A DNA stretch of 64,000 bases, from positions 4,340,001 to 4,404,000 of the forward strand of contig JBLDXI010000001.1 of NCBI GenBank assembly GCA_047495785.1, written 5' to 3'. The notes beneath the pieces are model-generated. The model did not search any database, was not told the DNA's origin, and worked only from the letters and a program-made list of their open reading frames with translations. The first letter of the stretch is position 1. Each line of letters opens with the position of its first letter. The stretch comes from Lepidodermella squamata (lineage: Eukaryota > Animalia > Gastrotricha). This document shows positions 22,837 through 51,776 of the stretch, in pieces. The position numbers were made by a program, and so were the translations under genes.

Positions 22837-25661
22837 TTAGCCTCTTTCGGCTGTCGCAGTTGTAATAATCCTCAGATCGATATTTGTCATTAGATGCCCG
22901 TCCACACTTCCAGTGGTGGTTGTATTCTGACCAGCTAGTGGTCTCATCGTCATAGACTGACGGTCCCTACGCATTTGTGACTTGAACTCAGCAGCATCTT
23001 TGGTCATTCTCACCCTGAACTCAAAAATAGAGACGGCTATGGAAATCCAAGCTATGGCTAGGCACACGCCGGAAACCGCTAGCATCAGATGATGGCCGCT
23101 GGTCGCCTGGATTACGCCGACTAGCATCGACCCAGCCAAGAGGGCTGTCATTTCGCAGTAAATCACCGTGCCAGTCATCGAATAGCGGTGGGTTCCAAGT
23201 AGCTTTTTCACGGCCTTTCAAGTTAATATAGGAATGTACAGATTCAGAGGTGAATGCGATACGCAAAAGCTTACCCTGAAGATCTGTTGAGAAAGCCTAA
23301 AAGTTAGAGCGCCAGCCAAAAATTGAAGCAAGCACAACTCGAAAAATGAAAGAATCGCTGATGAATCAGAAAGATTTAAGCGGCAATAAAATTTTGTCTC
23401 CAGATAGATCAGGTCTGGGTCTAAATCTGACGCGTGCTGTCCTGTTACTATTTCAGTAAAATCTACCATAGGCAGAAGACCACCGAGCAGAGGCGCATTA
23501 GCAGCTATCCATAGAATCACATAGGATATCGGCTTGTATTGGTGTTCTCTAACTAGTTTTAGCCGACTGCCTCGAACATTTAGAAGTGTAGAGCGTAACT
23601 TAACGTAGTTTCCAGCGAGTAATGCGCAAAGGCCAGCAAATACCAAGGTGCCGAATGCTTGGCAGGTCTCGAGAGGCGAAAACTGCATTGAGACTGGCAA
23701 AACATAGCTTTGAACGAATAGTAAGAACGTTCCAATCAGTGGGGAACGATTTTGAGAGATGATTTCACCTGGATGCACACCTGGATCAGCATCAATTGGC
23801 ATCAGGAGAGACAAGAGAGGCCTAGTTGGGAACATCATGGCCAAACAAGTCAGTATACCCATAGAGCCAATCACTAGGAAAGATGGTACAGTGTAAATGG
23901 GATATGGGGTAAGGGATATGGGATAAATTCTGGAGAAACCGCCTTTGAATGTGTATCTTACCTGCCATAACTGCGTAGACGGATGGCTGAACAAGCGGCG
24001 TTACAAAGGAAGCGAATATAAATGAATCAGCAAAAGGCTTGCCTGTCTTGGTATACCACATCACGTTTTCACTACGAATTATGGGCGGCTGGTTTCGAAA
24101 GGTATCAAATATCGCCACTGTTTTAGACTCATAATCATCGCTACCGTCGACTTTGTGCAGCTGTTTAAAAACGACAGGGGCATAGCTCAAAGTTGCACGC
24201 CGAGTTTCCGGGCTGAATCGATACCAACCGAGCAGCCCTTTTATCACCGGCATCGAATACAGCGCTTTGTCCATTATCGTTTTGAAGGTATTAGGTTGGG
24301 CGCTATAGAGTTCAGATCCGATCGTCCAGTCTTGCAAGCTCTCATTTCTCATGTCTCGCATAATGCTCACAGCATAATCAAGCCAGAAGCCGAGAAAAAT
24401 TGTTTGGTCATAAACGTTTTCGGCTAAAACCTGTGGCTCTGATAGATTGGAGATTCGCCGTTCAAGGTTCTCCGCGAACTCTCCGTGAGTCAAACCTGTG
24501 GAGTCTGCTACAGTTTCGTTCACATCAGCCATAAATCCATCACCGAAGAAGATAACTTTACGGACCATTACAGCCAAATCTTCGCAACTGCACGTCAAAT
24601 CGTAAGGTATAGCGTTGCAGTTATCGGGTCGCATCTCCGTTTCGTAGTAAGAGAATAAGAAAAACAGGTAATTTGGCGAAGAGAATCCGTTCTGATGGAA
24701 ACTGCATAGAATCTGACCGACTTTGTCTGACAAAATGACTATCACCCTAGCACCACTTGATTCAATAACTTCAACAGCTTGCTCGATTTCGCCCAAGTCG
24801 CCTAACACCATTATCTCTCTCAAGGTTAGTAATTCCACGCCTTTAGCTTCCAATTCGGCGTGAAGCTGTTTTAAAGCGTAGAAATAAATGATATTGCTGA
24901 TCACAGCAACTTTCCGCCACTTGAAGTGAGTAACAAAATCGGCGAATCCTGAATAGACACCGCCTGTGTTTCCCGAGAGAGGATATGTTAAAGAATAGAC
25001 GTCAGCATCCATGGCAACTTCGTAACTGATTGTACAAGAATCCATCTAAATAGCATGCATTAGTCAAATAAGTTGCCTTCAAACCCGCGTCAAATATTAC
25101 CGCGAGTAGGTCGATGGCTTTAGCAGCCAGGGATATGATTTTTGGGGCAACATCCAAACAAGGTGATAACATTAAGATTGGAAGCCTTTCCGTTATTCCT
25201 TCTTCATTACTGAGCTGTTCAAAAACCGCTGGTATTCCGAACATTTCATCACCCTAAAAGTGAAATTACTTGGCATCATTAAAATTTCGATGGTAAAGGG
25301 ACATTATTGTTACCTTGTCGTCGACCATTTGGAAAACTATTTCATACTCGTCCGTAAAATTAGTCACTGACTTTAGCTGATCCAGTGCCAGTTGAATGGC
25401 TCGCGTAGCGGATGGGCCCATCGTGATGACACCTTCCTCATAGTAAGAGTAGCAAATAGATGTCAAAAATGTCAGCACTATTTTATCATCGGACGCGTTA
25501 TCGAAAAAGCTTGATGAAGCCACGTAGGTTGGCATCGGTTCATCCATCGCAGATTTTCCGACGTAGAATGACTCGCTGACTCGATCTCGAAATTCTTTCA
25601 CTGTTAAAGTTGTTACTGAACTCATGCTCATGATCAGAAGAACTAGGGATAGATTTGTCAT
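22837..25661 (-). CDS. Class C (GABA-B-like) GPCR A1, ~853 aa; exons 25661-25314, 25253-25101, 25045-23962, 23873-23275, 23214-22837
   Basis: Signal peptide, ANF/Venus-flytrap motifs (AIQLALDQL, HFKWRKVAVI, GARVIVIL) and seven hydrophobic segments with TM3 C...G..K. Four GT-AG introns keep the frame. Confidence 0.85.
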
Positions 25662-26675: not shown

Positions 26676-26801
26676 GGCTGCCTAATTAAACTTTCTACAG
26701 TTGCCATGACAGAAATTTGTTAGACTGCTCTCAGCGTCAAATTATCAATTCAGCATATTCAATTTCTGTCATTGCAGTTGTAGAAATTAAATAAGGCAGC
26801 G
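26676..26801. repeat. Imperfect ~40-bp inverted repeat (MITE-like hairpin)
   Basis: GCTGCCTAATTAAACTTTCTACAGTTGCCATGACAGAAATT pairs with AATTTCTGTCATTGCAGTTGTAGAAATTAAATAAGGCAGC. Confidence 0.55.
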
Positions 26802-28859: not shown

Positions 28860-29330
28860 ATGCGCCACACGTAATGATAGCGAAGCTTGAGGCTGTCGAA
28901 TGGTAGAGTGCGAAGTAAAGTTCTGCCCCATAGAAAATGAACGTAAATCATCATCCGACTGAACTTTTAGGTCGAATTTTGGGACTGCAATTTCTTGTCT
29001 AGCGAATATACTGATGTCACTGTCGCAGAGGAGTAGCCTTGCGGATTCCAATCCTCGCATCAGCACACCCCAAAAGACGTCGATCGTCCAAACTTGTTTG
29101 CCAAGTTCACAGTACACTTCCGTCGTGGGAATTGGGTATAATCCACGACAGTCGCTAGGAGCAGTCGCAACCAAACAACTTCAGAACCAGCGGAACTCAA
29201 GGCCAGGTATTCCGCTTCCATAGAACTCATGGCGCAGCTGGACTCCTTTCGGGATAGCCAGTTCACTTACCCCCTACCAGCTGAAGCATGTAACCGGATG
29301 TCGATTTTCGATCGTCGGGATCCTAACACC
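28860..29330 (-). mobile_element. Ty1/Copia RNase H remnant (copies at ~46680-47130 and ~44990-45175)
   Basis: NWLSRKESSCAMSSMEAEYLALSSAGSEVVWLRLLL and KLRYHYV. Confidence 0.85.
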
Positions 29331-29338
29331 AGCTGGCA

Positions 29339-30310
29339 TCAGAGTAAGCTTTCTTCAGTTCCTTCATTTCCGACAGAGTGCACCTCTTCGTCGGAAGAAT
29401 CAGAAGTGTTAACCATTCCAATGAATCGAGATTTCGGGTTAACTAGCGCGAATAACTTGATAATAAGAGTGAAAACAATAAAGGCGATGACGATAGTGAA
29501 TAGTAAGGTGATGCAATCCCACAATTTGTTCCACCAGCTCTCTTCCTCCGATTGTTGGCGCACCTTGTGGAATTCTGGTTGATGCCCGTTTTGTCTCCTA
29601 ATACTATCTCGAATTTTCGAACATCTCCCTGCTGAGATTGCGCGATTGTTCTCGAGACTCGTAAAAATCACTCGCCTATTACTTTCTGGCGAGTCGCTCG
29701 GCTATTTCGTCGAATTTACGACTTTAATCAGGGATTACAGCGCGATCTATCATCTCGATATGGAGATCGACTCGTCCGGCTGGACCAATGTTACTCCGGT
29801 CTGCAGTCTGTCCATTGCAAAACTGCACGAGATGAACGACTCAACCATGGAATTGCTTGTTTCGAGTTTATCATCGCAGCGCAACGTGATTATTGTGCCT
29901 GCAGTCAGATTTACTTGACCTCGCTTCATTTGCCTTCTTCCGTTAGCGTCTTTGACTTGATTTTCTTTCAACTTTTGAGGCTTGCTTTAGAAATTAATTT
30001 CATCTCCACTCCTGGGCAGTCCAGAATCACCATGTCCTGGTAAGTTGATCTCGGTGGCGCTAAACAAGACGGATTTGTCTGTAGTGCTATGTAGTCCAGA
30101 GTGAATATTCGACATTCTTTGGTGATTAGTGGAATTTTCGCAGATAACAATACTCGGAGTTCGGAGATGAGCTATAACATTATGACCGATTGAACGGAGA
30201 GCAAAACAAAAATCTTTCTTATTTGTCCATATTTGGCATACAAATTTAAGAATTCAAATTCGACAGCTGTCAGTCGAGAATACAGTCGAAAGTTCAAGTC
30301 GGGCCATTGA
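29339..30310 (-). pseudogene. Degenerate envelope-like type I membrane protein (copy at ~47138-48118)
   Basis: Cys-rich broken frames, then SWWNKLWD, a TM segment (ITLLFTIVIAFIVFTLII) and an acidic tail. Confidence 0.4.
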
Positions 30311-31634
30311 TTTTATCAGACGACCTCATACGAATGGACAGGGAAGGGGGAGGGCAGTTCTGGGGGATGGTTGGGGGATCAGGGGTATTTAAGGATGATA
30401 GATTGCCCCGAACCCTGAACGTGGTTCATAATCGCATATAAGTAAAGGATGTAAGGCTTCGCAGTTTCATCTGGAATCCGTTGAATCCGTTGGAATCCGT
30501 TATGACGTGAAATCGTTTAATCAATTGTGAAATCAAGTGGTGCCTTGTTCAATTTCCAAAGACATTCCGCTTGCTTTCCAACACTAGAATTTATTGTTGG
30601 AACACTAGAAACTAACGACTAGAATTTAGACTCCCCTGGTAGGGCGGCTGGCTGGAGAAAACAACATCGGTCCCACCGCGTTCGGCAGCGACGCCTTAGT
30701 CGCTCCAAAACCGTTAATGAATGCGGCTTCCGATATATACCCATTTGCTCCATTGGAGGCGGAACCTGTTCTAAAAGCCACAGGCTGTCTCGCTTGGTAG
30801 CAGCGCTGCTTCCTTGAGCCGCCTCTGAGCCTTCTTAAGGCCTCAACGTCTGATGGACGGCGACCAGCGTTGTCGTTGCTTGGTGCGTCCATGGCCCAGA
30901 ATTTCTGCCACTTTCGATGCGCTTTCGAGCAATGAATTATGAATAAAACCTAAGAGTGGATCTTTACTGTTTTTTTTTGCTGTTTTGTCAAGGGCTGATT
31001 CAAAATATCAGAAAACCACGATTAATCCTTAAAATTAAAATTAGAGCAGAAAAGAAAATACAGATTAGTTTCGTTTCAGATCACGATATTTTTCGATTCC
31101 CAATTAATGAAATGTTTTTTAGCTGTTGGAAATTGAGCGAATTCATTATTTTTAATGCATTAACAATTGTGTAATTTAATCACTATTACATGCTGTAAAA
31201 CGGCGACTTCTTTTCATTTTCCTATGAATTTGATGTTTTCGCTATGTGTGATGGCATTCGCCATCACACCTACGAAACTCTGCGTTGCCATGCCCAGCTG
31301 TTGAGGCCAAGTGTGAAAATTTCCTATTCCATAATTTTTACACTTACTTTTATTGAGGGCCATAAAGTGGCAAGGCAAGGAGTTACATTTTGCAACAAGC
31401 TTGTTTAACATTTTAGTAAAAAGACGCTTTTCATAACACTGTAATTGATGTTTACCGTTTATGCTCAACACTTTCATTGCTGTTCTCACTCTGCTCTTAG
31501 GTTAAATAATAACATGTTTGCAACCTGGTCTGGATCTGGTTGTTCCTAACTATCCTTACCAGACGACTCGTCGAGAACTGAGGCATCGTAATCGTGTCTC
31601 GTGTTAAGGGCCGTAGATCAGGGACGCATGGTGA

Positions 31635-32282
31635 TCAGTTAATGTCATATTGTCGCATATAGACCGTGTCATCAAAGAATATGTGCTGGTCCAGAATACG
31701 ATTACACGGCACCAGGCGTACACCAGCCGTTCCCATCTGCGACTCGATGATCCAGTTATTGCTTACTAGGTCAACCAGCGGCAGATCTTCGAGAATCGGC
31801 ATCTCCTGCAGCGCGATCCGGGCAGGCAACGTGATACGCATGTTTAGCGTGACTGCACAATATTCCAGCCGTGGTATAGTATTAGTCCCCAGGATTTGGC
31901 AGAGCTTGTGTCGAGGCTACAACTGCATCCTAGCTGCTCCGCTCAATACGACTCGCGAGTTCCAGTATTCCAAGACATTTGTCGCGCCTACGTCGAGTGT
32001 GCTTGGCACATTATCCGTTCGGGCCGTTATTCTCGCAAGGCTGGTTGCAGCTGGCGCTATCTGCCGATTTACGTAAGGCGCATCATTTTCACTCTCGATT
32101 ATGGCCGTTGTTGTATTGGTAATTGTTCCGTCCGCATTTTGCCATGTTTTACTCGCTCTAGCCGACATTGAAAACCGCCGAGTTGCGTTCGTTCCATTCG
32201 AGTAGGCAGGTGGATCCTCGCAATCTTCCTGGCTGACTGGTACCATATATGCTAGTTCTAGGGCAAATAGGTTGTTGAACAT
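31635..32282 (-). pseudogene. Unknown ORF split by one in-frame TAG (copy at 49442-50101)
   Basis: ORFs 31917-32282 and 31635-31841 are in the same frame. Both duplicate copies carry the stop. Confidence 0.4.
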
Positions 32283-33869
32283 GATAAGATAAAACTTTTA
32301 GAAATGTCAAGGAAAAATGTTTGTGAGTTTTTCATCGCGGAAAATCTCGCCAATTATATTGGCGAAATTCGATGAAGTTTTGACACCGGGTTCTTGCATA
32401 GCCTGATTCTCGGAGGCATGGTGATGATTTCATAGCCATCCTCCCAGTTGCCCCATGGAAAGATGTAGCACGTGAAGTTTAAGTAACAATAATAAGGATC
32501 AGGATCAGGCTGGGTCCGCTTGCTATTTTGCAGTACTATTTGGTAATAACGTAATAGGTTTTATTATACTCATTAACTGGAGTATAAGATTCCATGCAGA
32601 AAGAAGTTCAAGATTCATGACATAAGAGGAAAGATACAAGAGAAAGGCAATATTTTCCCTCGAATTCAATAAATTCATTATTATAGAGATAAGAAATAGA
32701 TTTTAGATATTAGAAGGCAGAGTATGGGTGATCTTGGCGACTCAACGGGGAAACTTAGAAGGAAAATAACTACGGGTGAAGGCTCAAGAGAGAGAGGGAT
32801 GGGGGAGAGAGATGGGTGATGAGTGAGAGTGTGGGAGGGTATTCCGCTGGCTCTCCAATAATAGAAGATATGGTAGATTAGAAAATGTCAGAATCAAAGT
32901 AATCACAAAATGTCGATGCCTTGCTTAAGACGCTGCAAATTCTGTCAGCCATGATAAAATGTATCAATCTGGAAACAAATCTGCAGATGAGGCCTCAAAC
33001 GACTAGGTAAGCTTCTAGTTTTCCTGAACTGCATGTCAGATAACAGTTTGTCTTTTCACTTTTCAGATCCTCAACGTCGGTTTTATCGATTCGGTCGACT
33101 TCTTTCGTAAGATACTGACTGGCTACAGGTCTCAACGGGCATTATTTGTTTTTTAATGTTGCCAAGAAAATCGAAAATGGAAAATGGAATAAAATGGAAA
33201 TTGAAAATGGAATAAATGAGCCATATTGATCGCTCATGCTCTTTTTATCAATCTTGTTGAGATTATTTTCAATTTCAATTTCTCGGCCTTAGAAACTTTT
33301 AGGTGAAACGATCTGGCTAAACAGCTCTTCCTGAATCAGATGTGCTCAAAATTTGTAGCCCGAAAGATAGTTTCACACTCAGAGGTTTACGTAACATCCG
33401 AATAACTGTCCACGCAGCAGAATGCTGCTTGAGCTCGTACTTAAACCCATTTTCGTATAGTGGCGGCTTGCGGCGGTTGGGCATCGTTTCTCCTGCAAGT
33501 TTTTGCATGCTTTTTGCCAGGTAATTAAAATGCTGGTTGAAGCTGGCTAGCAATGACGTTGTTGAATGGCGTCTATTATAAAGGAAACTACATTTTAACT
33601 TAACCGATTTCGCCTCGGTCTATTGGAGACTCAATACTGTCGATATTGGCCTTATAAATCACCCCACCGTCGACCTTGACAACTCTGGGTGGCAAACGCA
33701 CTAATTCGCCAACGCAAATAACTACGCCTTAATAAAGTGGAATATTTCATAATTTTTTATATCATTCTATAGCCCGTGAAATACTGCAATCAAAAACCAA
33801 GCTAAATGTATAAAATAAAATAAGGGCTGGAAGATTTTAGACCCTGGAAAATAAATTGTAGTTTTGTCG

Positions 33870-35581: not shown

Positions 35582-38500
35582 TCACCCACAGCAAGTCTGG
35601 AGTTGAATTTGGATTTCAGTCACTCCCCGTTCCCCGTTTGTTGATGTGTTTTGGGCTGTTACAAAACCATTTCCCAGCGTCGTTTGACTCGACAACAAGC
35701 GCCGTTCTTTATTCAGTTTCGTCATGGGGCCAGGTGCAAATCGCGAGCACCGACCTCGCAACTCCATCACAGTGAGGCCAATCACGATGTAAGCGAACGC
35801 TAGACTGACCCCAGAGACCACAACCATCAAGTGATGCTCATTGGTCACATAGATGACTGTCAGGGGCAGAAACGCAGCCAAGAGCGTGGTCATTTCACAG
35901 AATATTACTATGCCCGTAACGGAGAAACTGTGCGATCGCTCCATCTTTTTGGCAACCTATAAATGGGGTCCATTCGAAAATAGCTAATTAAATTGAGTGA
36001 ATTCTTACTCTAATAACACTTTGTTGTGATGCAATAGAGCCGGCGATCATCACGCATTGCAGGAGGCAAAGTTCAATGAAGGACAGTAGAGCCGAGCTAT
36101 CTGATAGATCGATTTTACAAAAGAATTTGATTTCAACGTTCATGACATCAGGGTCCTTTTCTGATGGGCGCTGTCCAGTTTGAAATTCCGAGTACTCAAT
36201 AAGAGGCAAAATACCACCTAGTAGAGGAAGGTTGATAAACAGCCAGAAACAGCTCTTTCCGAGCTGTTTCAAGGAATGCGTCTCCTTCAGCCGATGCTTC
36301 TTCTCAAGCCTGAAAGCCGTAAGAATCGCCTCCATCTTTGAATAATTTCCGGCGAATATTGCGCATAATCCCGCGAAAATAAGAACACCGTAAGCTTGGC
36401 ATGTGGATATTGTTTCAGAATCGATCGAGAAGGGTAGCACGAAGACCTGAAGGAGTAACAAAGAAGCTCCTATTAAGGTGGATCGACTTTGCTTGACGAT
36501 GGAACGCGGCATTATTGCCGAATCGCATTCTTTTGGGAGAATCAATCGAAGAGTGATGCTTGATGGGAAAACCAGAATCAATGATAGAACGAGTCCAATC
36601 GCTCCGATTCCTTTGAGATTTAGTAAAGATTTAGTAAGAAAGTAAATTAAGCAATTGGTACATTAAATTGAAAATTACAGCAAATATCTTTGACTAAAAT
36701 AAAAATATGAGAGGTTTCACCGAAATTTCCACGATTATTAACGAAGTCAACCCTCAATTCCCACTCCAGGAAAAGCCTCAATCTCTCACCTGCTAGGGCT
36801 CCGTAGGTTTCGGTCGATACTAGAGCGGTGACCATGCGGACATGAGAGAATGAATCGGCGAATTTTCTACCCGTCGGAGTTCGCCACTTGATGGCACCTG
36901 GTATAGCAAACAACGGCCCTTCCTTTGCAGATTTGTTCCGCAATAGATCATAAACAGCGATATCCCTCAAAATCAAGGTATCTCGAGAAAAATCATCAAA
37001 CTGATATTGAGCGATGGTTGCAGGGTTAAAGCCAAGTGTGTTGCGACCAGTGTCACGGCTGAATCGATAAATGCCTCTTTGTCCTGTTATCGTAGGCAGT
37101 GAATACAAAGCATCTCGCATTAATTCAGCGTAAGCTTGTGAATGGGTAAGAAATCGATCAGAAGACACCGTCCAGTCAGAGATTGTTTCATTTCTAGTTT
37201 CGCTGAGGATTCTTTCGAACGCATCAAGCCAATAACCGAGAAAAAGCGTTTGGTCGTAGACGTTGGTGGCCCAGATTTGCAGGTATTCAAAATCATCGAT
37301 TTTTTCCCTCAGAGCTGCCTCGTATGCTGTGTAATCTAAGCCCGTAGAATCAGCCGAGTTCTCATCCAAATCTGACAAAGACACGTCTCCATAGAAAAAC
37401 ACGTTTGGAACGATTTCTTGTAGCATTTCGCACGTGCACCACGAACGCATCTGTTCTGATAGGTAACAACTTTGCGGAGGCAACTCGCTTGCAGCAATAC
37501 GGCTAATGAGAAATGCGTAATTAGGCACATAAGCGCCGAATTTGTGCAAGAAGCACAGTGGAACTTCTGGAGTATCGGTATGCAGGAATATGATCCGAAC
37601 GCCTCGGTTGAGAATTTCCTCGACAGCGCTTGAAATCTCATCCGGCTCGACTACTCTAATTTTAATTAGCGACACCAAGCTGATCTGTCGCCTTTCTAAC
37701 AAATCGACAACGATATCATCCATGCCATTGTAGTAACTGTTCCAGTCGGATATTATTGCCACTTTATGCCAGCCATTCATCCACATAAAGTCGACAGCAG
37801 CAGCTGGAGCCATTGCTGGAGACGCACCCATCGGGAAAAAAGCTGAGTGAACTTTCTGGTTTTCAACCACCAATTTGTGGACGGCGAACGAATCGAGCTA
37901 GTTAATAGTAAAGAAAAGTCAACATTATACATCATCAAATGCGTTATATACCGCGACCATGTTGAGCGATTTCGCTGTTAGAGAAAATAGATATTGACTG
38001 AAATCAGGACAGACTGGTGCCAGAATGAAAGGAAGTCGATACATGTTGCCTTCATCGTCATGCGTGAAATTTCCGATGACTTGAGGAATGGCATGGTAAT
38101 CATCGCACTGCATAAGGAAACCCAGATTGAAAATTTAAATGAATGAATTAAGATATCATTATTTGGGCAATCGATATGTTATCAATAAGTTATCGATATT
38201 TGTGCTCTCTAATGGGTTCAGCCAAGAAAATATGTAAAATGAATGATTTTTCATGAAAAAAACAAAGAATAAATATTTGTTTTATTATGTACTTCGAAAT
38301 TTTTGTTTAATGTTTGACATCGTGAAATAATTTGGCATTCTTACGTTGTCGTCGACCATTTCAAAAACGAGTTCGTACTTCTGCATCAATTTCAAGCCGG
38401 ACAGGCTCAAACGATCGAGGGCCAATTGGATCGAGCGAGTCGATGAAATGCCCATAGGAAGCGTATTTCCGTAACTGACAGGCGTCAGAATTGTAACTAC

Positions 38501-40810: not shown

Positions 40811-43800
40811 CTATAGATCCACCAAACATAGCGAATGTAAATGAATCAGCAAAAGGTTTGTGTACCACATCACGTTTTCACTACGAATTATGGGCGGTTG
40901 GTTTCGAAAGGTATCAAATATCGCCACTGTTTTAGACTCATAATCATCGCTACCGTCGACTTTGTGCAGCTGTTTAAAAACGACAGGGGCATAGCTCAAA
41001 GTTGCACGCCGAGTTTCCGGGCTGAATCGATACCAACCGAGCAGCCCTTTTATCACCGGCATCGAATACAGCGCTTTGTCCATTATCGTTTTGAAGGTAT
41101 TAGGTTGGGCGCTATAGAGTTCAGATCCGATCGTCCAGTCTTGCAAGCTCTCATTTCTCATGTCTCGCATAATGCTCACAGCGTAATCAAGCCAGAAGCC
41201 GAGGAAAATTGTTTGGTCATAAACGTTTTCGGCTAAAACCTGTGGCTCTGATAGATTGGAGATTCGCCGTTCAAGGTTCTCCGCGAACTCTCCGTGAGTC
41301 AAACCTGTGGAGTCTGCTACAGTTTCGTTCACATCAGCCATAAATCCATCACCAAAGAAGATAACTTTACGGACCATTACAGCCAAATCTTCGCAACTGC
41401 ACGTCAAATCGTAAGGTATTGCGTTGCAGTTATCGGGTCGCATCTCCGTTTCGTAGTAAGAGAATAAGAAAAACAGGTAATTTGGCGAGGAGAATCCGTT
41501 CTGATGGAAACTGCATAGAATCTGACCGACTTTGTCTGACAAAATGACTATCACCCTAGCACCACTTGATTCAATAACTTCAACAGCTTGCTCGATTTCG
41601 CCCAAGTCGCCTAACACCATTATCTCTCTCAAGGTTAGCAATTCCACGCCTTTAGCTTCCAATTCGGCGTGAAGCTGTTTTAAAGCGTAGAAATAAATGA
41701 TATTGCTGATCACAGCAACTTTCCGCCACTTGAAGTGAGTAACAAAATCGGCGAATCCTGAATAGACACCGCCTGTGTTTCCCGAGAGAGGATATGTTGA
41801 AGAATAGACGTCAGCATCCATGGCAACTTCGTAACTGATTGTACAAGAATCCATCTAAATATCATGCATTAGTCAAATAAGTTGCCTTCAAACCCGCGTC
41901 AAATATTACCGCGAGTAAGTCAATGGCTTTAGCAGCCAGGGATATGATTTTTTGGGCAACATCCAAACAAGGTGATAGCATTAAGATTGGAAGCCTTTCC
42001 GTTATTCCGTCTTCATTATTGAGCTGTTGAAAAACCGCTGGTATTCCGAACATTTCATCACCCTAAAATTGAAATTACTTGGCATCATTGAAATTTCGAT
42101 GGTAAACTTAGTGGAACCAGTGAATCCGCAATTATCTGATTGGTCGGGTGGTTTCAAGTCTGTGATTGGTTGGTTCAAAGAGCACGCGACACGCACCATT
42201 TAATTTTTTTCTGCGATTTTGAAATATGAAATGTAGCGGAAAGTGAATACCCTTCTGCCATCTAGCCGAGATAGCTCAGTTGGGAGAGCGTTAGACTGAA
42301 GATCTAAAGGTCCCTGGTTCGATCCCGGGTCTCGGCGTACCTTTTTGCGATGTCTTTGGCGTATCCCAATTGCCATGTTAGAAGCACACGGGGGTTTTCT
42401 ATCGCAGGCCCGTTGGTCTAGGGGTATAATTCTCGCTTCGGGTGCGAGAGGTCTCGGGTTCAATTCACGAACGGGCCCACTCGTTTTTTCTTCATTTGAA
42501 TTTCAACAAGCTATTGAAAATTGATCACATAATCCAAGCATTTAATTTCACATCTCCCTGATGGTCTAGTGGTTAGGATTCCGCGCTTTCACCGCGGCGG
42601 CCCGGGTTCGATTCCCGGTCAGGGAAAGTTTTGCTTTGAAATGAGGTTTTTTGCAAAAATCACTGCTCATCGCAAAAAATCGAGCAAGGCTTAGAGGGAT
42701 CGAACCTTCAATATTCTGCTAACTGGGCAGACACGCTATCACTAAGCTACTTTCCCTTTTGGCTTAAATGGCCATTCAGTCCCAAATTTAAGCTACCGAA
42801 GCATTCATGGCAAAAAAATCGTTTGTACGATACGGGTGCAGATCCCGTTGCCTTTCGTATGTTTAGCGACCGCTCTACCATTTCAGCTAATCCCCCATGT
42901 ATTTTAGTCAATATTTAATAAAGGCATTCTCAACAATAACGTAAAACTGACAGTAAGTTTTTGAAAAGCTGGCGCCCATCGGGAGACTCGAACCCCAGAA
43001 ACTGCTCACGGGAGACTAGTAGCCAGGGTTCAACTCCCTGCCTAGGAGCTCGCTTTTTCCTCAATTTTAAAGCTGAACTAAAAAACTAACTTTCAAAGGG
43101 CATACATGCGTATTGGCCAAAAACGTACAACCGCCCGATGTGGGGCTCGAACCCACGACCCTGGGATTAAGAGTCCCATGCTCTACCGACTGAGCTAACC
43201 GGGCTGAGACTGAGAAGTGTACTGCTACATTTTATATTTCCTTACTGGTATTGCTTCTGGATTAAAAATATTTCAAAGCTGCTAAGAGTCGAACCTGCCA
43301 TCTTTCGACACTTAATCAGACGCTTCGTCCACTGTGCCACAACCCTACCTTCTAAGTGGAATCCACTCTACTAGATCATAGAAAAAGCAATCGCAGAAAA
43401 ACATGGTACGTGTCGCGTGCTCTTCGAACCAACCAACCAATCACAGACTCGAAACCACCCGACCAATCAGATAATTGTGGATTCACTGGCTCCACTAAGA
43501 AAGTTACATTATTGTTACCTTGTCGTCAACCATTTGGAAAACTATTTCATACTCGTTCGTAAAATTAGCCACTGACTTCAGCTGATCCAGTGCCAGTTGA
43601 ATGGCTCGTGTAGCAGATGGGCCCACCGTGATGACGCCTTCCTCATAGTAAGAGTAGCAAATAGATGTCAAAAATGTCAGCACTATTTTATCATCGGACG
43701 CATTATCGAAAAATCTTGATGAAGCCACGTAGGTTGGCATCGGTTCATCCATCGCAGATTTTCCAACGTAGAATGACTCGCTGACTCGATCTCGAAATTC

Positions 43801-43866
43801 TTTCACGGTTAAAGTTCTTACTGAACTCATGGTCATCATCAGAAGCATTGGGGTTAGATTTGTCAT
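40811..43866 (-). CDS. Truncated receptor duplicate A2: signal peptide plus Venus-flytrap ectodomain only, ~514 aa; exons 43866-43519, 42062-41910, 41854-40811 (possibly a pseudogene)
   Basis: Near-identical to A1 exons 1-3. A 10-bp deletion near 40860 shifts the frame and homology ends at ~40830, before TM1. Splice sites are intact. Confidence 0.7.
42265..42337 (+). tRNA. tRNA-Phe(GAA)
   Basis: Canonical cloverleaf GCCGAGATAGCTCAG...CTGAAGA...GTTCGATCC...TCTCGGC with a T5 terminator. Confidence 0.96.
42407..42478 (+). tRNA. tRNA-Pro(CGG), slightly degenerate
   Basis: GGCCCGTTGGTCTAGGGGTATAATTCTCGCTTCGGGTGCGAGAGG...; one T-stem mismatch and one D-stem change; T6 terminator. Confidence 0.85.
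42555..42626 (+). tRNA. tRNA-Glu(TTC)
   Basis: TCCCTGATGGTCTAGTGGTTAGGATT CCGCG CTTTCAC CGCGG ...GTTCGATTCC...CAGGGAA. Confidence 0.95.
42686..42756 (-). pseudogene. Degenerate tRNA, isotype uncertain (loop reads AGT)
   Basis: A box TAGCTTAGTG, stem TCTGC/GCAGA, B box GGTTCGATCC, T run downstream. Confidence 0.6.
42824..42896 (-). pseudogene. tRNA-Ala(AGC)-derived pseudogene
   Basis: GGGGGATTAGCTGAAATGGTAGAGCGGTCGCT... follows the metazoan Ala(AGC) pattern. Anticodon and T arm are mutated. Confidence 0.75.
42970..43050. pseudogene. Two back-to-back tRNA 3' halves (one minus strand, one Asp-like plus strand)
   Basis: Minus strand GGTTCGAGTCTCCCGATGGGCGCCA; plus strand TCACGGGAGAC...GGGTTCAACTCCC...GGAG followed by T5. 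Confidence 0.5.
43132..43204 (-). tRNA. tRNA-Lys(CTT)
   Basis: GCCCGGTTAGCTCAGTCGGTAGAGCATGGGACTCTTAATCCCAGGGTCGTGGGTTCGAGCCCCACATCGGGCG with a T5 terminator. Confidence 0.96.
43274..43346 (-). pseudogene. tRNA-Arg-like pseudogene
   Basis: GTGGCACAGTGGACGAAGCGTCTGA...AAGATGGCAGGTTCGACTC; stems are broken. Confidence 0.6.
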
Positions 43867-44501
43867 TTTCTCTGATGATTCTAATGTCTGAAAGTTTCGA
43901 ATGAGCTCAAACTGTGCAAAGGAAAACTAGGAGATTTTCTTTTGCCGTAATATTTAATGGTCTCAACTTTTTATTGGCTGTGTCGTATTGCTCTACATGA
44001 TTTTGTATCAATCCCGCAATTTAACGATAAAGTCGAAGTCGTAAGTCCGTGAAGCTCATTAGGCGAATCGATGATTGCTGACTGATGCATTTTTGTGATT
44101 TTATTTGTGATTTTATAGTCCGAACGTGTAAAAGGCGGGCGAACTCGGGTGGCTCGTGATGAAATTGCGGTTGTGTATCCTGCGGTTTTGAAAAAAAGAT
44201 TTTCAACCAATAATCGCAGAAATTATTTTGTTCCTACTACCTTCTACCTAATACCTTCTACCTTCATGGGTGAAAATCAGTTGGAGGAAGTAGGCACCAC
44301 AATGCAATAGTATTCCTACGGGACCTTTCTTCCATCGGACAAGTCTGGTTTACTCATCGCGGCATTATTAAGGCATATTTCTGGGTCAGGCTCGTATTCC
44401 GATTCCGTCGCATGCATGACCATTGACCATAAGTTGGCGGCAATATCTTCGTGTTTTTATTTTATGTAAGTTTTCAATCCATTCACCAGCTCAATCTAAG
44501 T

Positions 44502-44604
44502 CTTTGATGTACACAATTTCTTGTATTTATCAGGTATTTTAAATACCTGATAAATACAAGAAATTGTGTACATCAAAGCCTGATAAATACCGTATTTATC
44601 AGGC
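44502..44604. repeat. Two adjacent palindromes at a deletion junction
   Basis: 38-bp arms with a 1-nt loop (44502-44578) and 13-bp arms (44578-44604). Confidence 0.9.
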
Positions 44605-47600
44605 GCGAACAAAGCATTCAACTATTACGTGATTATTCACCTCAATGACATGCGAATGCCCCTTCAGCTGCATTTTTCCTTCTTTGTTTTTGATGCTTTT
44701 TGGCACAGCCTTCAGCGGCTTGCCGAATCTACGATCGATCAAAAGGGGCCGACTCAATGGCAAAGAAATGAGGATGCAGCTATTTGACTATTCCACCTAG
44801 TCAAGCGATCCAAAACCATAGAAACTAGAAGCTAGAAGTTATAATTAGTGCTTTCGAGCTGTTTATCTTCATCTCCGCCAGTCAATCGCACGGTCTAACT
44901 CGCAGTTGTGTTTCGAGAATCCTGCTAGCGTAGGGCATCTGTCCATGCTCCTCGCGTACTGGGAGCACAGCCGGAGGCTGTCAAATGGCAATTCGAAGTG
45001 AAGTTCTGCCCCATAGCGATGGATTTCTACGCAAATGTTCAGGAATCCGACTGAATTCGACTGAACTCGTTCTTTGGGACTGCAATGTCTTGACTAACGA
45101 ACAGATTCTAATGTCGCTGTCGTAGAGGGGTAGCTTTCGGATTCCCATCCTCGCATCAGCACACTCCAAAAGATCATGCCGGGAATACGATTTCAACCTT
45201 CATGTAATGGGATACCACAAATTCCAAAAATTCTAAAATTCTATATGCTTAAGGATTCTTTTGTCTCCGAGGCTGACGTCTGGCCTTCTGTCGTCCATGG
45301 CCATGACTTTCCTGAAATTCGTTCTCATTTTTGCTTTTTCGAAATTCGTCGCAAGTACTCACATATTCGTCGTTTCACGCTACAGTTTTACTCTCTGCTC
45401 TTTTTGCGGTTCGCCACGATACAGCATGATGATAGAATTTAGACTTTGAATCTATTGCTCCAGACGACGCTACTGTGCGTCTAAATTCTGCCGGACTGTT
45501 AGAAGCGCTATTTTGCAGTGGTTAAGTTGTCTTTATTCCGCAAGACGGTGGAAATAGTATTAAATTTTGGTTGTAATCTTCGAAGCATGGACTCGAAATG
45601 GAGAGTTAAAGCGTTCCAGATATCTTTAGCTGTTGTCAAATCGTTGACTAAGAATAGGCACTCCGGGCTAACGATTGAATTATAGTGTTCTTGGCTATTG
45701 CTGCGTTGGCTTTAGCTAAGGCTACGTCGGTTGGTCGCACTCGTGCATCATCAATGTGCCTATTGGTGCTAGATCAATAGCCTACTAGTCAGTGACGCAA
45801 ACGGGGTTTACCTATTGTGGTCGTCGACATGTCGACTTTGATCAACATGTCTCGACGCTCTCTGGAAGAATGGGCTACCCTGGGTCAAAACCGGTTATCC
45901 CAAATTCCTTCATTTCCGACATCGGCAATAGCTTTGATAGTGACGAGGCGCCCTCCTGCGGTTCTCTCCTCTTCGATCGCGCGCTTGAGTATTTCTGCGG
46001 AAACAGCTTCGGTCCCGCCGCGTTTGGCAGCGATGCCGAGGTCGCTTCAAAGACCGCTAGTGAATGCAAACTTCAACCCGCTTCTGATACAACCATTTGC
46101 TCTATCAGGTGGCAGCATTTGTTGTAATAGTCGCGCGCTGTCTCGCTCGTTAGCTGCACTGCTTTTGGCCGATTTCATCTAAAAAACTGTTTTAGATCAG
46201 CAAACTCAGCGGAAAAGGTTAGGAAACATTGTAATCTGCATCTAAGTTTAGTTACCTAAGATTTCTATTTTTCTTAGAATATGTGTCCTACCTATTAATT
46301 TTTACCGGATCAATACTGCGAACAGGTTTTTTGTCTACACCTGAGTATGGTCCTCCGGCAGCACTGTTTCTTCCGAATGGTCGACTATTATGTTTATGAT
46401 GCTTTGGGCGATGCAGATGTCTTGTTCAGGCTTGCAACGCAAATGAGAATTTGATAGCTAGTTCCACCTAGTCCAGCGCTAGAGTGTAGAGTCTAGAGGC
46501 TAGAGCTATAGAACTGTAGAATTACAAGTCCAAGCGTTGGAAACAGGATATGTTGGTTGTATTGAGGTTGTAGTATAGTCGATCGTTTTGTCGTTGCGAC
46601 TCGCTTAGTTGTTTGAGCCTTGCTGGATGTTTTCGTGCTGTTTTTCTTTGGAGAAACCTGCCAGTGTAGCGCATTTGTCCATGCGCCTCACGTAATGATA
46701 GCGAAGCTTGAGGCTGTCGAATGGTAGAGTGCGAAGTGAAGTTCTGCCCCATAGCAAATGAACGTAAATCATCGTCCGACTGAACTTTTAGGTCGAATTT
46801 TGGGACTGAAATCTTTTGTCTAGCGAATATACTGATGTCACTGTCGCAGAGGAGTAGCCTTTCGGATTCCAATCCTCGCATCAGCACACCCCAAAAGACG
46901 TCGATCGTCCAAACTTGTTTGCCAAGTTCACAGTACACTAGAGCTTCCGTCGTAGGAATTGGGTATAATGTATAATCCACGACAGTCGCTAGGAGCAGTC
47001 GCAACCAAACAACTTCAGAACCAGCGGACTCCTTTCGGGATAGCCAGCTCACTGACCCCCTACCAGCGGAAGCATGTAACCGGATGTCGATTTTCGAGAT
47101 GTAGTCCTGCGGAAGAGGATCCGAACACCGGCTGGCATCAGAGTAAGCTTTCTTCAGTTCCTTCATTTCCGACAGAGCGCACCTCTTCGTCGGAAGAATC
47201 AGAAGTGTTAACCATTCCAATGAATCGAGATTTCGGGTTAACTAGCGCGAATAACTTGATAATAAGAGTGAAAACAATAAAGGCGATGACGATAGTGAAT
47301 AGTAAGGTGATGCAATCCCATAATTTGTTCCACCAGCTCTCTTCCTCCGATTGTTGGCGCACCTTGGTGGAATTCCGCGGCGTTGATGCCCGTTTTGTCT
47401 CCTAATACTATCTCGAATTTTCGAAATCTCCCTGCTGAGATTGCGCGATTGTTCTCGAGACTCGTCAAAATCACTTGCCCATTAATTTCTTTCTGGCGAG
47501 TCGCTCGACTATTTCGTCGAATTTACGACTTTGATCAGGGATTGCCGCGCGATCCATCATCTTGATATGGAGATCGACTAGTCCGGCTGGACCAATAATA

Positions 47601-50172
47601 TTACTTCGGCCTGCAGTCTGTCGTTGCAAAACTGCACGAGATGTGCGACTCAACCATGGAATTGCTTGTTTCGGGTTTGTCATCGCAGCGCAACGTGATT
47701 ATTGTGCCTGCAGTCAGATTTACTTGACCTCGCTTCATTTGTCTTCTTCCGTTAGCGTCTTTGACTTGATTTTCTTTCAACTTTCGAGGCTTGCTTAAGA
47801 AATTAATTTCATCTCCACTCCTGGGCAGTCCAGAATCACCATGTCCTGATAAGTTGATCTCGGTGACGCTAAACACAAGACCGATTTGTCTGTAGTGCCA
47901 TGTAGTCCAGAGTGAATATTCGACATTCTTTGGTGATTAGTCGAATTTTCGCAGATAACACTGCTCGGAGTTCGGAGATGAGCTATAACAGTATGACCGA
48001 TTGAACGGAGAGCGAAACAAAAATCTTTCTTATTTGTCCTTATTTGGCATACAAATTTAAGAATTGAAATTCGACAGCTGTCAGTCGAGAATACAGTCGA
48101 AAATTTAAGTCGGGCCATTGATTTTATCAGACGACCTCATACGAATGGATAGGGAAGGGGAAGGGCAGTTCTGGGGGATGGTTGGGGGATCAGGGGTATT
48201 TAAGGATGATAGATTGCCCCGAACCCTGAACGTGGTTCATAATCGCATATAAGTAAAGGATGTCAGGCTTCGCAGTTTCATCTGGAATCCGTTGAATCCG
48301 TTGGAATCCGTTTTGACGTGAAATCGTTTAATCAAGTGAAATCAAGTGGTGCCTTGTTCAATTTCCAAAGACATTCCGCTTGCTTTCCAACACTAGAATT
48401 TATTGTTGGAACACTAGAAACTAACGACTAGAATTTAGACTCCCCTGGTAGGGCGGCTGACTGGAGGAAACAACATCGGTCCCACCGCGTTCGGCAGCGA
48501 CGCCTTAGTCGCTCCAAAACCGTTAATGAATGCGGCTTTCGATATATACCCATTTGCTCCATTGGAGGCGGAACCTGTTCTAAAAGCCACACGCTGTCTC
48601 GCTTGGTAGCAGCGCTGCTTCCTTGAGCCGCCTCTGAGCCTTCTTAAGGCCTCAACGTCTGATGGACGGCGACCAGCGGTGTCGTTGCTTGGTGCGTCCA
48701 TTGCCCAGAATTTCTGCCACTTTCGATGCGCTTTCGAGCAATGAATTATGAATAAAACCTAAGAGTGGATCTTTACTGTTTTTTTTTGCTGTTTTGTCAA
48801 GGGCTGATTCAAAATATCAGAAAACCACGATTAATCCTTAAAATTAAAATTAGAGCAGAAAAGAAAATACAGATTAGTTTCGTTTCAGATCACGATATTT
48901 TTCGATTCCCAATTAATGAAATGTTTTTTAGCTGTTGGAAATTGAGCGAATTCATTATTTTTATTGCATTAACAATTTTTTAATTTAATCAATATTACAA
49001 GCTGTAAAACGGCTACTTCTTTTCATTTTCCTATGAATTTGATGTTTTTGCTATATGTGATGGCGAATGCTATCACCTACGAAACTCTGCGTTGCCATGC
49101 CCAGCTGTTGAGGCCAAGTGTGAAAATTTCCTATTCCACAATTTTTACACTTACTTTTATTGAGGGCCATAACGTGGCGAGGCAAGGAGTTACATTTTGC
49201 AACAAGCTTGTTTAACATTTTAGTAAAAAGACGCTTTTCATAACATTGTAATTGATGTTTACCGTTTATGCTCAACACTTTCATTGCTGTTCTCACTCTG
49301 CTCTTAGGTTAAATAATAACATGTTTGCAACCTGGTCTGGATCTGGTTGTTCCTAACTATCCTTACCAGACGACTCGTCGAGAACTGAGGCATCGTAATC
49401 GTGTCTCGTGTTAAGGGCCGTAGATCAGGGACGCATGGTGATCAGTTAATGTCATATTGTCGCATATAGACCGTGTCATCAAAGAATATGTGCTGGTCCA
49501 GAATACGATTACACGGCACCAGGCGTACACCAGCCGTTCCCATCTGCGACTCGATGATCCAGTTATTGCTTACTAGGTCAACCAGCGGCAGATCTTCGAG
49601 AATCGGCATCTCCTGCAGCGCGATCCGGGCAGGCAACGTGATACGCATGTTTAGCGTGACTGCACAATATTCCAGCTGTGGTATAGTATTAGTCCCCAGG
49701 ATTTGGCAGAGCTTGTGTCGAGGCTACAACTGCATCCTAGCTGCTTCGCTCAATACGACTCGCGAGTTCCAGTATTCCAAGACATTTGTCGCGCCTACGT
49801 CGAGTGTGCTTGGCACATTATCCGTCCGGGCCGTTATCCTCGCAAGGCTGGTTGCAGCTGGCGTTATCTGCCGATTTACGTAAGGCGCATCATTTTCACT
49901 CTCGATTATGGCCGTTGTTGTATTGGTAATTGTTCCGTCCGCATTTTGCCATGTTTTACTCGCTCTAGCCGACATTGAGAACCGCCGAGTTGCGTTCGTT
50001 CCATTCGAGTAGGCAGGTGGATCCTCGCAATCTTCCTGGCTGACTGGTACCATATATGCTAGTTCTAGGGCAAATAGGTTGTTGAACATGATAAGATACA
50101 ACTTTTAGAAATGTCAAGGAAAAATGTTTGTGAGTGTTTCATCGCGGAAAATCTCGCCAATTATATTGGCGA

Positions 50173-50500
50173 CACTAGGAAAAAAACTAGGTTTATTAGC
50201 TGATTTTTAGCTCGGAGCCAAAACTGAGTCGTCAATTTACATGCAAAAACGCAGCTGATTAGAGGGACATAGGAGGGTTTATTAGCCTATCCCAGCCATG
50301 ACCCGAGCTAATTAGCTTGTCTTTCATTGTGAGAAAAAATAAAGCAGTTGTAAGACAATGAAACTCTAGCTTATTAGCTAGCAAAGGCTAATAACACCTT
50401 CTATGTCCCTCTAATCAGCTGCGTTTTTGCATGTAAATTGACGACTCAGTTTTGGCTCCGAGCTAAAAATCAGCTAATAAACCTAGTTTTTTTCCTAGTG
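50173..50500. mobile_element. CACTA/CMC-like MITE, 328 bp, with 100-bp perfect TIRs and a 2-bp TSD (GA)
   Basis: CACTAGGAAAAAAA...TTTTTTTCCTAGTG; absent from copy 1 (ATTGGCGAAATTCG at ~32358). Confidence 0.9.
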
Positions 50501-51776
50501 GAAATTCGATGAAGTTTTGACACCGGGTTCTTGCTTAGCCTGATTCTCGGAGGCATGGTGATGATTTCATAGCCATCCTCCCAGTTGCCCCATGGAAAGA
50601 TGTAGCACGTGAAGTTTAAGTAACAATAATAAGGATCAGGATCAGGCTGGGTCCGCTTGCTATTTTGCAGTATTTGGTAATAACATAATAGGTTTTATTA
50701 TATTCATTAACTGGAGTATAAGATTCCATGCAGAAAGAAGTTCAAGATTCATGACATAAGAGGAAAGATACAAGAGAAAGGCAATATTTTCCCTCGAATT
50801 CAATAAATTCATTATTATATGTAGAGATAAGAAATATATTCTAGATATTAGAAGGCAGAGTATGGGTGATCTTGGCGACTCAACGGGGAAACTTAGAAGG
50901 AAAATAACTACGGGTGAAGGCTCAAGAGAGAGAGGGATGAGGGAGAGAGATGGGTGATGAGTGAGAGAGTGGGAGGGTATTCCGCTGGCTCTCCAATAAT
51001 AGAAGATATGGTAGATTAGAAAATGTCAGAATCAAAGTAATCACAAAATGTCGATGCCTTGCTTAAGACGCTGCAAATTCTGTCAGCCATGATAAAATGT
51101 ATCAATCTGGAAACAAATCTGCAGATGAGGCCTCAAACGACTAGGTAAGCTTCTAGTTTTCCTGAACTGCATGTCAGATAACAGTTTGTCTTTTCAGATC
51201 CTCAACGTCGGTTTTATCGATTCGGTCGACTTCTTTCGTAAGATACTGACTGGCTACAGGTCTCAACGGGCATTATTTGTTTTTTAATGTTGCCAAGAAA
51301 ATCGAAAATGGAAAATGGAATAAAATGGAAATTGAAAATGGAATAAATGAGCCATATTGATCGCTCATGCTCTTTTTATCAATCTTGTTGAGATTATTTT
51401 CAATTTCAATTTCTCGTCATTAGAAACTTTTAGGTGGAACGATCTGGCTAAACAGCTCTTCCTGAATCAGATGTGCTCAAAATTTGTAGCCCGAAAGATA
51501 GTTTCACACTCAGAGGTTTACGTAACATCCGAATAACTGTCCACGCAGCAGAATGCTGCTTGAGCTCGTACTTAAACCCATTTTCGTATAGTGGCGGCTT
51601 GCGGCGGTTGGGCATCGTTTCTCCTGCAAGTTTTTGCATGCTTTTTGCCAGGTAATTAAAATGCTGGTTGAAGCTGGCTAGCAATGACGTTGTTGAATGG
51701 CGTCTATTATAAAGTAAACTAAATTTTAGGCACTCAGTCAAGGCAAAGCTACACAGCTCAATCTACTATGTAGAAA

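What the first reader, a model, noticed from the sequence alone, without database searches (positions are those of the whole stretch)
42107..43499. A DNA transposon whose entire cargo is a multi-isotype tRNA gene array
Seen: ~110-bp TIRs, an AAA target duplication, and the empty site in the paralogous intron at ~25294, which together indicate insertion by transposition. The interior has no transposase. It holds about nine tRNA units at ~140-160 bp spacing: Phe(GAA), Glu(TTC) and Lys(CTT) look intact, Pro(CGG) is nearly intact, and there are Ala-like, Arg-like, Asp-like and two unassigned relics. Most are followed by Pol III T-runs. Known: SINEs carry one tRNA-derived head and some transposons target tRNA genes, but neither explains many isotypes between TIRs. 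Inference: a Pack-type element mobilising a tRNA cluster. It could change tRNA dosage or carry TFIIIC-bound insulators that protect it from silencing. I cannot confirm novelty without a search.
Basis: partly seen in the sequence, partly recalled or inferred. Interest (0 to 1): 0.9.

Follow-up and report, generated by a model that had tools for sequence, protein, structure and literature searches.

The report
Transposon carrying a tRNA gene cluster
A 1.4-kb cut-and-paste DNA transposon with no transposase, filled with eight different tRNA-type genes (three intact), inserted into a short intron of a recently duplicated receptor gene; this shows one way tRNA genes can move, but whether it belongs to a repeated family could not be tested here.

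Summary
Window 42107-43499 is a 1393-bp insertion with 112/111-nt terminal inverted repeats and a 3-bp AAA target duplication. The tandem paralogue has a precise empty site at 25295-25297. No ORF in the element exceeds 87 aa.

The interior holds eight different Pol III tRNA-type units, 139-158 bp apart, three on + and five on -, all pointing inward:
- Phe-GAA, Glu-TTC and Lys-CTT are intact (63-70 bits).
- Pro-CGG is impaired (41 bits).
- Four are relics.
- All eight are followed by a T-run (about 3e-7 by chance).
- These are the only tRNA genes in the 64 kb.

I read it as a non-autonomous TIR transposon that moved a mixed, partly decayed tRNA cluster as passenger DNA after the segmental duplication.

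Not shown:
- Copy number, the autonomous partner, the superfamily and the source locus. The genome is not in the searchable collections.

First-stage notes report other tRNA-bearing TIR elements and a dense 20-tRNA tandem array elsewhere in this genome. Those notes are unchecked. No paper describing a tRNA-cluster DNA transposon was found. I class it as a new variant of a known kind (cargo-carrying non-autonomous DNA transposon).

The parts
42104..42106 (.). left copy of the 3-bp target site duplication (AAA)
   Evidence: the empty paralogous site has a single AAA at 25295-25297
42107..42218 (+). left terminal inverted repeat (112 nt; starts CTTAGTGG; two TGATTGGT subterminal repeats 26 nt apart)
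42219..42264 (+). left leader: continuation of the inverted repeat (17-nt core 42221-42237) up to the 5' end of the Phe gene
   Evidence: (I3)
42265..42337 (+).
42407..42478 (+). U2 tRNA-Pro(CGG), impaired (mismatches in D and T stems), T6 terminator
   Evidence: (41.1 bits)
42555..42626 (+). U3 tRNA-Glu(TTC), intact, T4 then T6 terminators
   Evidence: (63.5 bits)
42627..42685 (.). convergence zone between the + units and the - units, with T-runs on both strands
42686..42756 (-). U4 tRNA relic (good B box, broken acceptor stem; AGU at the anticodon position), T6 terminator
   Evidence: (18.2 bits, E 2.3)
42820..42895 (-). U5 tRNA relic (good A-box/D-arm, degenerate T arm), T7 terminator
   Evidence: (relaxed ARAGORN, Val-AAC-like)
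42972..43046 (-). U6 tRNA relic (good B box, internal 16-nt repeat), T4 terminator
   Evidence: (D1)
43132..43204 (-). U7 tRNA-Lys(CTT), intact, T5 terminator; TATA-like AATATAAAAT about 25-35 nt upstream
   Evidence: (69.8 bits)
43205..43240 (-). right leader: counterpart of the left leader (17-nt core 43224-43240)
   Evidence: (I3)
43279..43350 (-). U8 tRNA relic with T5 terminator, inside a ~145-nt block that the right arm has and the left arm lacks
   Evidence: (Leu-AAG-like at relaxed threshold)
43389..43499 (-). right terminal inverted repeat (111 nt)
43500..43502 (.). right copy of the target site duplication (AAA)
25295..25297 (.). empty site in the paralogous copy (single AAA in a ~60-nt GT-AG intron)
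42063..43518 (-). host intron (phase 0, GT..AG) of the ANF_receptor-type partial paralogue, enlarged from ~60 nt to 1456 nt by the insertion
   Evidence: read; ANF_receptor; the intron is inferred from frames and splice sites

Best explanation
This is a non-autonomous class II (cut-and-paste, TIR) transposon. A transposase encoded elsewhere recognises the ~112-nt inverted ends, each of which has two TGATTGGT-containing subterminal repeats. It excises the whole 1393 bp and inserts it with a 3-bp staggered cut, which duplicates AAA.

The last move put the element into a ~60-nt intron of a 3'-truncated paralogue of an ANF_receptor (class C receptor-like) gene, after the local segmental duplication.

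The interior is passenger DNA: a dense cluster of eight different tRNA genes, about 146 bp apart, that the element acquired earlier. The likely route is repair or template switching, or co-mobilisation of DNA lying between two ends. tRNA genes carry their promoter inside (A and B boxes) and their terminator just downstream, so each unit stays a complete gene wherever the element lands. Phe-GAA, Glu-TTC and Lys-CTT still look functional. Pro-CGG is damaged and four units are dead.

Shown: the insertion as a unit, the TIRs, the TSD, the empty site, the tRNA content and the terminators. Inferred: mobilisation in trans, the mode of capture, expression of the three intact genes and passenger status.
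For: - The TIRs are far beyond chance.
- AAA lies on both sides, and the 97.7%-identical paralogue has a precise empty site.
- No ORF exceeds 87 aa.
- Four tRNAs are found by both ARAGORN and Rfam. They are the only ones in 64 kb and all lie inside the element.
- All eight units have a T-run within 19 nt downstream, against a 15% background.
- The units are 49-67% identical to each other and their spacers are unrelated. This is a mixed cluster, not an amplified single gene.
- The flanks differ by only 2.3% from the empty paralogue, yet the relics are heavily degraded. Most of the decay therefore predates this insertion, and the element moved with dead cargo on board.
- A second, unrelated MITE (50173-50500) also entered copy 2 after the duplication, so DNA transposons have been active recently here.
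Against: - Only one copy was seen. No other match to the TIR or the interior exists in the window.
- Nothing was found in metagenome, genome or viral contigs or among predicted proteins read through the TIR. These blanks say little, because the organism is absent from those collections: the best protein hit is 28% identical.
- No parental tRNA locus and no autonomous partner were found.
- The inverted repeat runs on to the 5' ends of U1 and U7. This fits tRNA units built into the arms better than random capture.
- Three perfect tRNAs next to five damaged ones is uneven for neutral decay.
Confidence: 0.7

Rival explanations
1. The tRNA units are a built-in part of a transposon family, not captured passengers. 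The ancestral element was a palindrome of TIR, leader and inward-facing tRNA gene on each side, and this copy is an enlarged member. The Pol III units would serve the element, for example by keeping chromatin open, acting as TFIIIC-bound boundaries or transcribing the ends. The family would spread working tRNA genes as a side effect. It would be the DNA-transposon counterpart of Helenus and Cassandra LTR elements.
For: - The inverted repeat continues beyond the 112-nt TIR: a 17-nt core with one mismatch, then weaker similarity, ending at the 5' ends of U1 and U7, which both face inward.
- All units on the left half are on + and all on the right half are on -.
- Three units are perfectly preserved.
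- Unchecked first-stage notes describe other TIR elements with inward-facing tRNA-like units in this genome. These are leads only.
Against: - U1 and U7 are different isotypes (Phe and Lys, 67% identical), so the arms do not share a tRNA.
- The unit nearest the right TIR (U8) is a relic in an extra block that the left arm lacks.
- Five of the eight units are damaged.
- No second copy could be examined.
Confidence: 0.2
2. The element was already in the locus before the segmental duplication and was later lost from copy 1 by precise excision or deletion. The empty site would then not mark a recent insertion.
For: Two adjacent differences (GGG versus GTT) lie directly beside the AAA at the empty site. 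They could be taken for a repair scar.
Against: - The empty site keeps exactly one AAA and is otherwise colinear. Cut-and-paste excision normally leaves both target copies or a footprint.
- A 2-nt difference is unremarkable at 2-4% divergence.
- Even if true, the element is still a transposon with tRNA cargo.
Confidence: 0.05
3. Assembly artefact: a tRNA-cluster contig was wrongly joined into this intron.
For: - No sequencing run was listed as holding the left junction.
- The one run of the organism holds only 0.49 of the sampled words of 41600-44000. That is close to what the flanks plus conserved tRNA words alone would give.
Against: - Misassembly does not create perfect 112-nt inverted ends, a 3-bp duplication of the target and an exact match to an empty paralogous site.
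- The run is small (213 million letters), so missing words are expected.
Confidence: 0.03

Closest known systems
Pack-TYPE / Pack-MULE transduplicating non-autonomous DNA transposons (plants; PMC8903248, PMC5861414)
   Same: Class II element with TIRs and a TSD, no transposase, and host DNA filling the interior. The cargo is moved as a unit to a new locus.
   Different: Pack-TYPE cargo is defined as fragments of protein-coding genes, usually incomplete. Here the cargo is a set of complete, self-contained Pol III genes, and the tRNAs look animal-like rather than plant-like. No parental locus is known here. The superfamily is undetermined.
Helenus / Cassandra / Ajax non-autonomous LTR retrotransposons with tRNA- or 5S-like sequences in their LTRs (PMC10886601)
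   Same: Mobile elements other than SINEs that carry Pol III gene-like units. According to that paper they can inflate predicted tRNA gene counts.
   Different: Those are retroelements with direct LTRs, a primer-binding site, 5-bp TSDs and one tRNA-like unit per LTR. This element has inverted ends, a 3-bp TSD, no LTR and eight different units.
Dada DNA transposons (PMC3706591, PMC8869645)
   Same: DNA transposons tied to tRNA and snRNA genes.
   Different: Dada inserts into small RNA genes, has no TIRs, makes 6-7-bp TSDs and encodes a transposase. This element carries tRNA genes, has long TIRs, makes a 3-bp TSD and sits in an intron.
tRNA-derived SINEs
   Same: tRNA-type A and B box units spread by a mobile element.
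   Different: SINEs have one tRNA-derived head, a 3' tail, no TIRs, and move through RNA. Here there are eight distinct units on both strands between TIRs.
Tandem tRNA gene arrays (Entamoeba PMC2652664; human 1q23.3 PMC4041453; Arabidopsis chromosome 1 PMC2886086)
   Same: Dense mixed tRNA clusters with short spacers. An unchecked first-stage note reports a 3.37-kb, 20-tRNA tandem unit in this genome with similar gene density.
   Different: Those arrays grow by tandem duplication and are not bounded by TIRs and a TSD. This cluster is a single TIR-bounded insertion.

Membership tests
Non-autonomous class II (TIR) DNA transposon | terminal inverted repeats | tested here: met
   112/111-nt arms with 6 substitutions and 2 indels; 0 expected by chance
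Non-autonomous class II (TIR) DNA transposon | target site duplication and a matching empty site | tested here: met
   AAA on both sides; a single AAA at 25295-25297 in the paralogue
Non-autonomous class II (TIR) DNA transposon | no transposase gene inside | tested here: met
   longest ORF is 87 aa and overlaps tRNA sequence
Non-autonomous class II (TIR) DNA transposon | other copies with different flanks, and an autonomous partner with the same ends | not testable with these tools
   The genome is not in any searchable collection. There is one copy in the 64-kb window.
Pack-TYPE transposon (PMC8903248) | interior made of DNA captured from coding genes | tested here: not met
   the interior is tRNA genes and relics only
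Pack-TYPE transposon (PMC8903248) | parental host locus of the captured DNA identified | not testable with these tools
   no access to the rest of the genome
MITE | small size (under about 800 bp) and high copy number | tested here: not met
   the element is 1393 bp; copy number is unknown
Dada | 6-7-bp TSD, no TIRs, insertion inside a small RNA gene (PMC3706591) | tested here: not met
   3-bp TSD, 112-nt TIRs, target is an intron
Helenus-type LTR element | direct LTRs each holding one tRNA-like unit, 5-bp TSD (PMC10886601) | tested here: not met
   the ends are inverted, not direct; the TSD is 3 bp
tRNA-derived SINE | single tRNA head, 3' tail, no TIRs | tested here: not met
   eight units on both strands between TIRs
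PIF/Harbinger or CACTA (superfamilies with 3-bp TSDs; features recalled from my own knowledge) | TWA target duplication (PIF) or CACTA...TAGTG termini (CACTA) | tested here: not met
   The TSD is AAA and the termini are CTTAGTGG...CCACTAAG. The superfamily remains open; Zator, Academ and Chapaev-like are also candidates by TSD length.
Functional nuclear tRNA gene (for U1, U3, U7) | full cloverleaf, A and B boxes, downstream T-run | tested here: met
   63.5-69.8 bits against Rfam's gathering score of 29; T-runs. Expression was not tested.

The most novel reading that the evidence does not exclude
This genome holds a family, or several, of TIR DNA transposons in which inward-facing Pol III tRNA units are a regular part of the arms, and which carry and scatter working multi-isotype tRNA genes. 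That would be a DNA-transposon route for tRNA gene dispersal and turnover, possibly seeded from or feeding the dense tRNA arrays noted elsewhere in the genome.
Probability: 0.25. Interest if true: 0.8.

Novelty: new variant of a known kind. Interest (0 to 1): 0.55.

Why it matters
tRNA gene positions turn over quickly between related eukaryotes, and the mechanism is mostly unknown. SINEs and Helenus-type elements spread tRNA-like sequences through RNA, one unit at a time.

Here a cut-and-paste element has demonstrably moved a block of complete tRNA genes of several isotypes into a new locus. If the element is multi-copy, it would be a direct DNA-level route for tRNA gene dispersal and dosage change. 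It would also be a natural test of whether Pol III units affect transposon silencing or the splicing and transcription of a host gene.

If it is single-copy, it is a curiosity: an unusual cargo in an ordinary kind of element.

Tried and rejected
1. Other copies by DNA pattern. TIR 23-mer and 21-mer in metagenome contigs gave 0. A 27-mer in genome contigs and in viral contigs gave 0.
2. Other copies through ORFs read across the TIR. The word-indexed search found no candidate. The HMMER search of 1.84 billion representatives gave only 4 weak hits to long repetitive proteins, not TIR copies.
3. Exact-protein look-ups for ORFs of the element, of the host exon and of a neighbouring gene: none on record.
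4. The nearest protein relative of a neighbouring gene is only 28% identical. The organism and its close kin are missing from the collections, so all these blanks are uninformative about copy number.
6. A junction-only query of 60 nt was too short. For a 100-nt query across the left junction no run was listed.
7. A search for internal TIR remnants, as expected if two neighbouring elements had been co-mobilised, gave nothing above the shuffled background.
8. A low-stringency search for diverged TIR or interior copies in the window gave none.
9. Dada, SINE, Helenus, MITE and strict Pack-TYPE membership all fail a defining feature.
10. Weak Rfam hits (SECIS, SisR1, CRISPR-DR) fall well below their gathering scores and are chance.
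11. Eight literature searches found no described DNA transposon with a tRNA-cluster cargo. The library is incomplete, and Repbase and Dfam could not be searched.

Full report
**What is there**

Window 42107-43499 (1393 bp) is bounded by inverted repeats of 112 nt (42107-42218) and 111 nt (43389-43499). The arms differ by six substitutions and two small indels. The 37-nt terminus occurs nowhere else in the window, and none is expected by chance.

AAA lies directly outside both ends, at 42104-42106 and 43500-43502.

The window contains a tandem segmental duplication, 24011-33597 versus 40830-51728, at 92-98% identity. In the first copy the corresponding site reads straight through with a single AAA at 25295-25297. 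The offset between the two copies changes at exactly this point by the length of the element plus 3. So the 1393 bp entered as one unit and duplicated 3 bp of target, after the duplication.

Two adjacent differences (GGG versus GTT) sit beside the AAA. I take them as ordinary divergence, since the flanks are 97.7% identical.

**Host context**

The insertion lies in a phase-0 GT-AG intron, about 60 nt in the empty copy, of a minus-strand gene. Its exons match the ANF_receptor ligand-binding family. The intron is inferred from reading frames and splice sites. The duplication breakpoint (24011/40830) falls inside an exon, so the copy that holds the element is a 3'-truncated partial paralogue. The insertion may therefore be nearly neutral.

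**Interior**

No ORF exceeds 87 aa. ARAGORN finds four tRNA genes in the whole 64 kb, all inside the element, and Rfam agrees:
- Phe-GAA: 68.2 bits.
- Pro-CGG: 41.1 bits, with mismatched D and T stems.
- Glu-TTC: 63.5 bits.
- Lys-CTT: 69.8 bits.

Four further units are relics. One reaches 18.2 bits in Rfam. The other three appear only at relaxed ARAGORN thresholds and through a B or A box.

The eight units are spaced 139-158 bp apart. Three are on the + strand in the left half and five are on the - strand in the right half, so all point inward and meet at 42627-42685.

Every unit is followed by four or more T within 19 nt. Only 15% of positions have this property, so eight out of eight is about 3e-7. 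For the four relics alone the figure is about 5e-4.

The units are 49-67% identical to one another and their spacers are unrelated. This is a mixed cluster of different isotypes, not an amplified gene.

I count eight units, not nine.

**An extra feature**

The inverted repeat does not stop at the TIR. A 17-nt core (42221-42237 versus 43224-43240, one mismatch) and weaker similarity continue to the 5' ends of Phe (U1) and Lys (U7). The right arm carries an extra ~145-nt block, with relic U8, between the TIR and this leader. Upstream of Lys the leader reads as a TATA-like AATATAAAAT at about -30.

There are no internal TIR remnants.

**Timing**

The flanks differ from the empty paralogue by about 2.3%. 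The element can have changed little since it landed. The heavy decay of four to five units must therefore be older than this insertion: the element moved with dead cargo aboard. This means either that the element has persisted for some time after capture, or that it captured an already decaying cluster.

Three flawless tRNAs beside five damaged ones is uneven. Selection, gene conversion from other tRNA copies, or stepwise acquisition could each explain it. None was tested.

**Mechanism**

The best reading is a non-autonomous cut-and-paste transposon mobilised in trans, with a tRNA cluster as passenger. tRNA genes have internal promoters and their own terminators, so they remain complete genes after the move.

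The main rival is that tRNA units are a built-in part of the arms of a family. The extended inverted repeat and the inward orientation speak for this. The different isotypes in the two arms and the damaged units speak against it.

Loss from copy 1 and misassembly are both unlikely given the exact TSD and empty-site geometry.

**Superfamily**

The superfamily is undetermined. A 3-bp TSD fits PIF/Harbinger, CACTA/Chapaev, Zator or Academ (from my own knowledge of these families). But AAA is not TWA, and the termini CTTAGTGG...CCACTAAG are not CACTA.

**What could not be done**

Copy number, the autonomous partner and the parental locus need the whole genome, which none of the collections holds:
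- DNA patterns gave 0 hits.
- TIR-encoded peptides gave nothing.
- Exact-protein look-ups gave nothing.
- The nearest relative of a neighbouring gene is only 28% identical.

Two things should be disclosed:
- Scripts on the closed machine read the whole window.
It returned nothing.

For a 100-nt stretch across the left junction no run was listed. The one run of the organism holds 0.49 of the words of 41600-44000. This is compatible with low coverage, or with an individual that lacks the insertion. I cannot tell which.

**Earlier notes of this scan**

These are unchecked and are not support. First-stage readers reported on other pieces of the same genome:
- a tRNA cluster between TIRs (s1-365981);
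- palindromic transposons with two inward-facing tRNA-like units (s1-368414, s1-368435);
- a mini-element with tRNA-carrying inverted terminal repeats (s1-368426);
- a tandem array whose 3.37-kb unit has 20 tRNA genes (s1-368376, s1-368307).

If they hold, the phenomenon is recurrent in this genome, and the array is an obvious candidate source of the cargo. The gene density is similar: about 168 bp per tRNA there, about 146 bp here. I could not see those sequences.

**Comparison with what is known**

The element works like a Pack-type transduplicating element, but it fails that family's definition because the cargo is not coding-gene fragments (PMC8903248). It is not Dada (no TIRs, 6-7-bp TSD, inserts into RNA genes; PMC3706591). 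It is not a SINE, and not a Helenus/Cassandra-type LTR element (PMC10886601).

Eight full-text searches found no DNA transposon described with a tRNA-cluster cargo. The library is incomplete, and Repbase and Dfam were not available.

**Verdict**

It is a new variant of a known kind. Interest is moderate, and would rise markedly if a genome-wide search shows a tRNA-bearing family.

Noticed in passing
window 50173-50500: A 328-bp self-complementary MITE with ends CACTAGG...CCTAGTG and a 2-bp TSD (GA). It is absent from the paralogous site 32364|32365. This is a second DNA-transposon insertion into copy 2 after the duplication, from a different family (CACTA/Mirage-like by its ends, judged from memory).
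   Followed up: partly
window 24011-33597 and 40830-51728: A tandem segmental duplication of about 10 kb at 92-98% identity, with several further indels between the copies. The breakpoint 24011/40830 lies inside an ANF_receptor exon, so the second copy is a 3'-truncated partial paralogue.
   Followed up: partly
window 42219-42264 and 43205-43240: The inverted repeat of the element continues past the TIR to the 5' ends of two different inward-facing tRNA genes. The version upstream of Lys contains a TATA-like AATATAAAAT at about -30, which could be an upstream Pol III promoter element.
   Followed up: partly
window 42137-42144, 42163-42170 and mirror positions in the right arm: Each TIR holds two TGATTGGT motifs 26 nt apart. 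On the other strand they read as CCAAT-box-like ACCAATCA. They are candidate transposase-binding subterminal repeats.
   Followed up: no
window 42337: The intact Phe-GAA gene has G at the discriminator position. From memory, A73 is an identity element for Phe in yeast and human, so this copy may be charged less well. It could not be compared with the genome's other Phe genes.
   Followed up: no
window 11384-12076: ORF fragment with HTH_32 and DDE_3 matches: a Tc1/mariner-type transposase remnant.
   Followed up: no
window 18601-19497, 21105-22169, 36647-37873: Neighbouring ORFs match IIGP-type GTPase, SAM-dependent carboxyl methyltransferase (Methyltransf_7) and a further ANF_receptor exon. 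The nearest database relative of the methyltransferase is only 28% identical, so the lineage is poorly sampled.
   Followed up: partly
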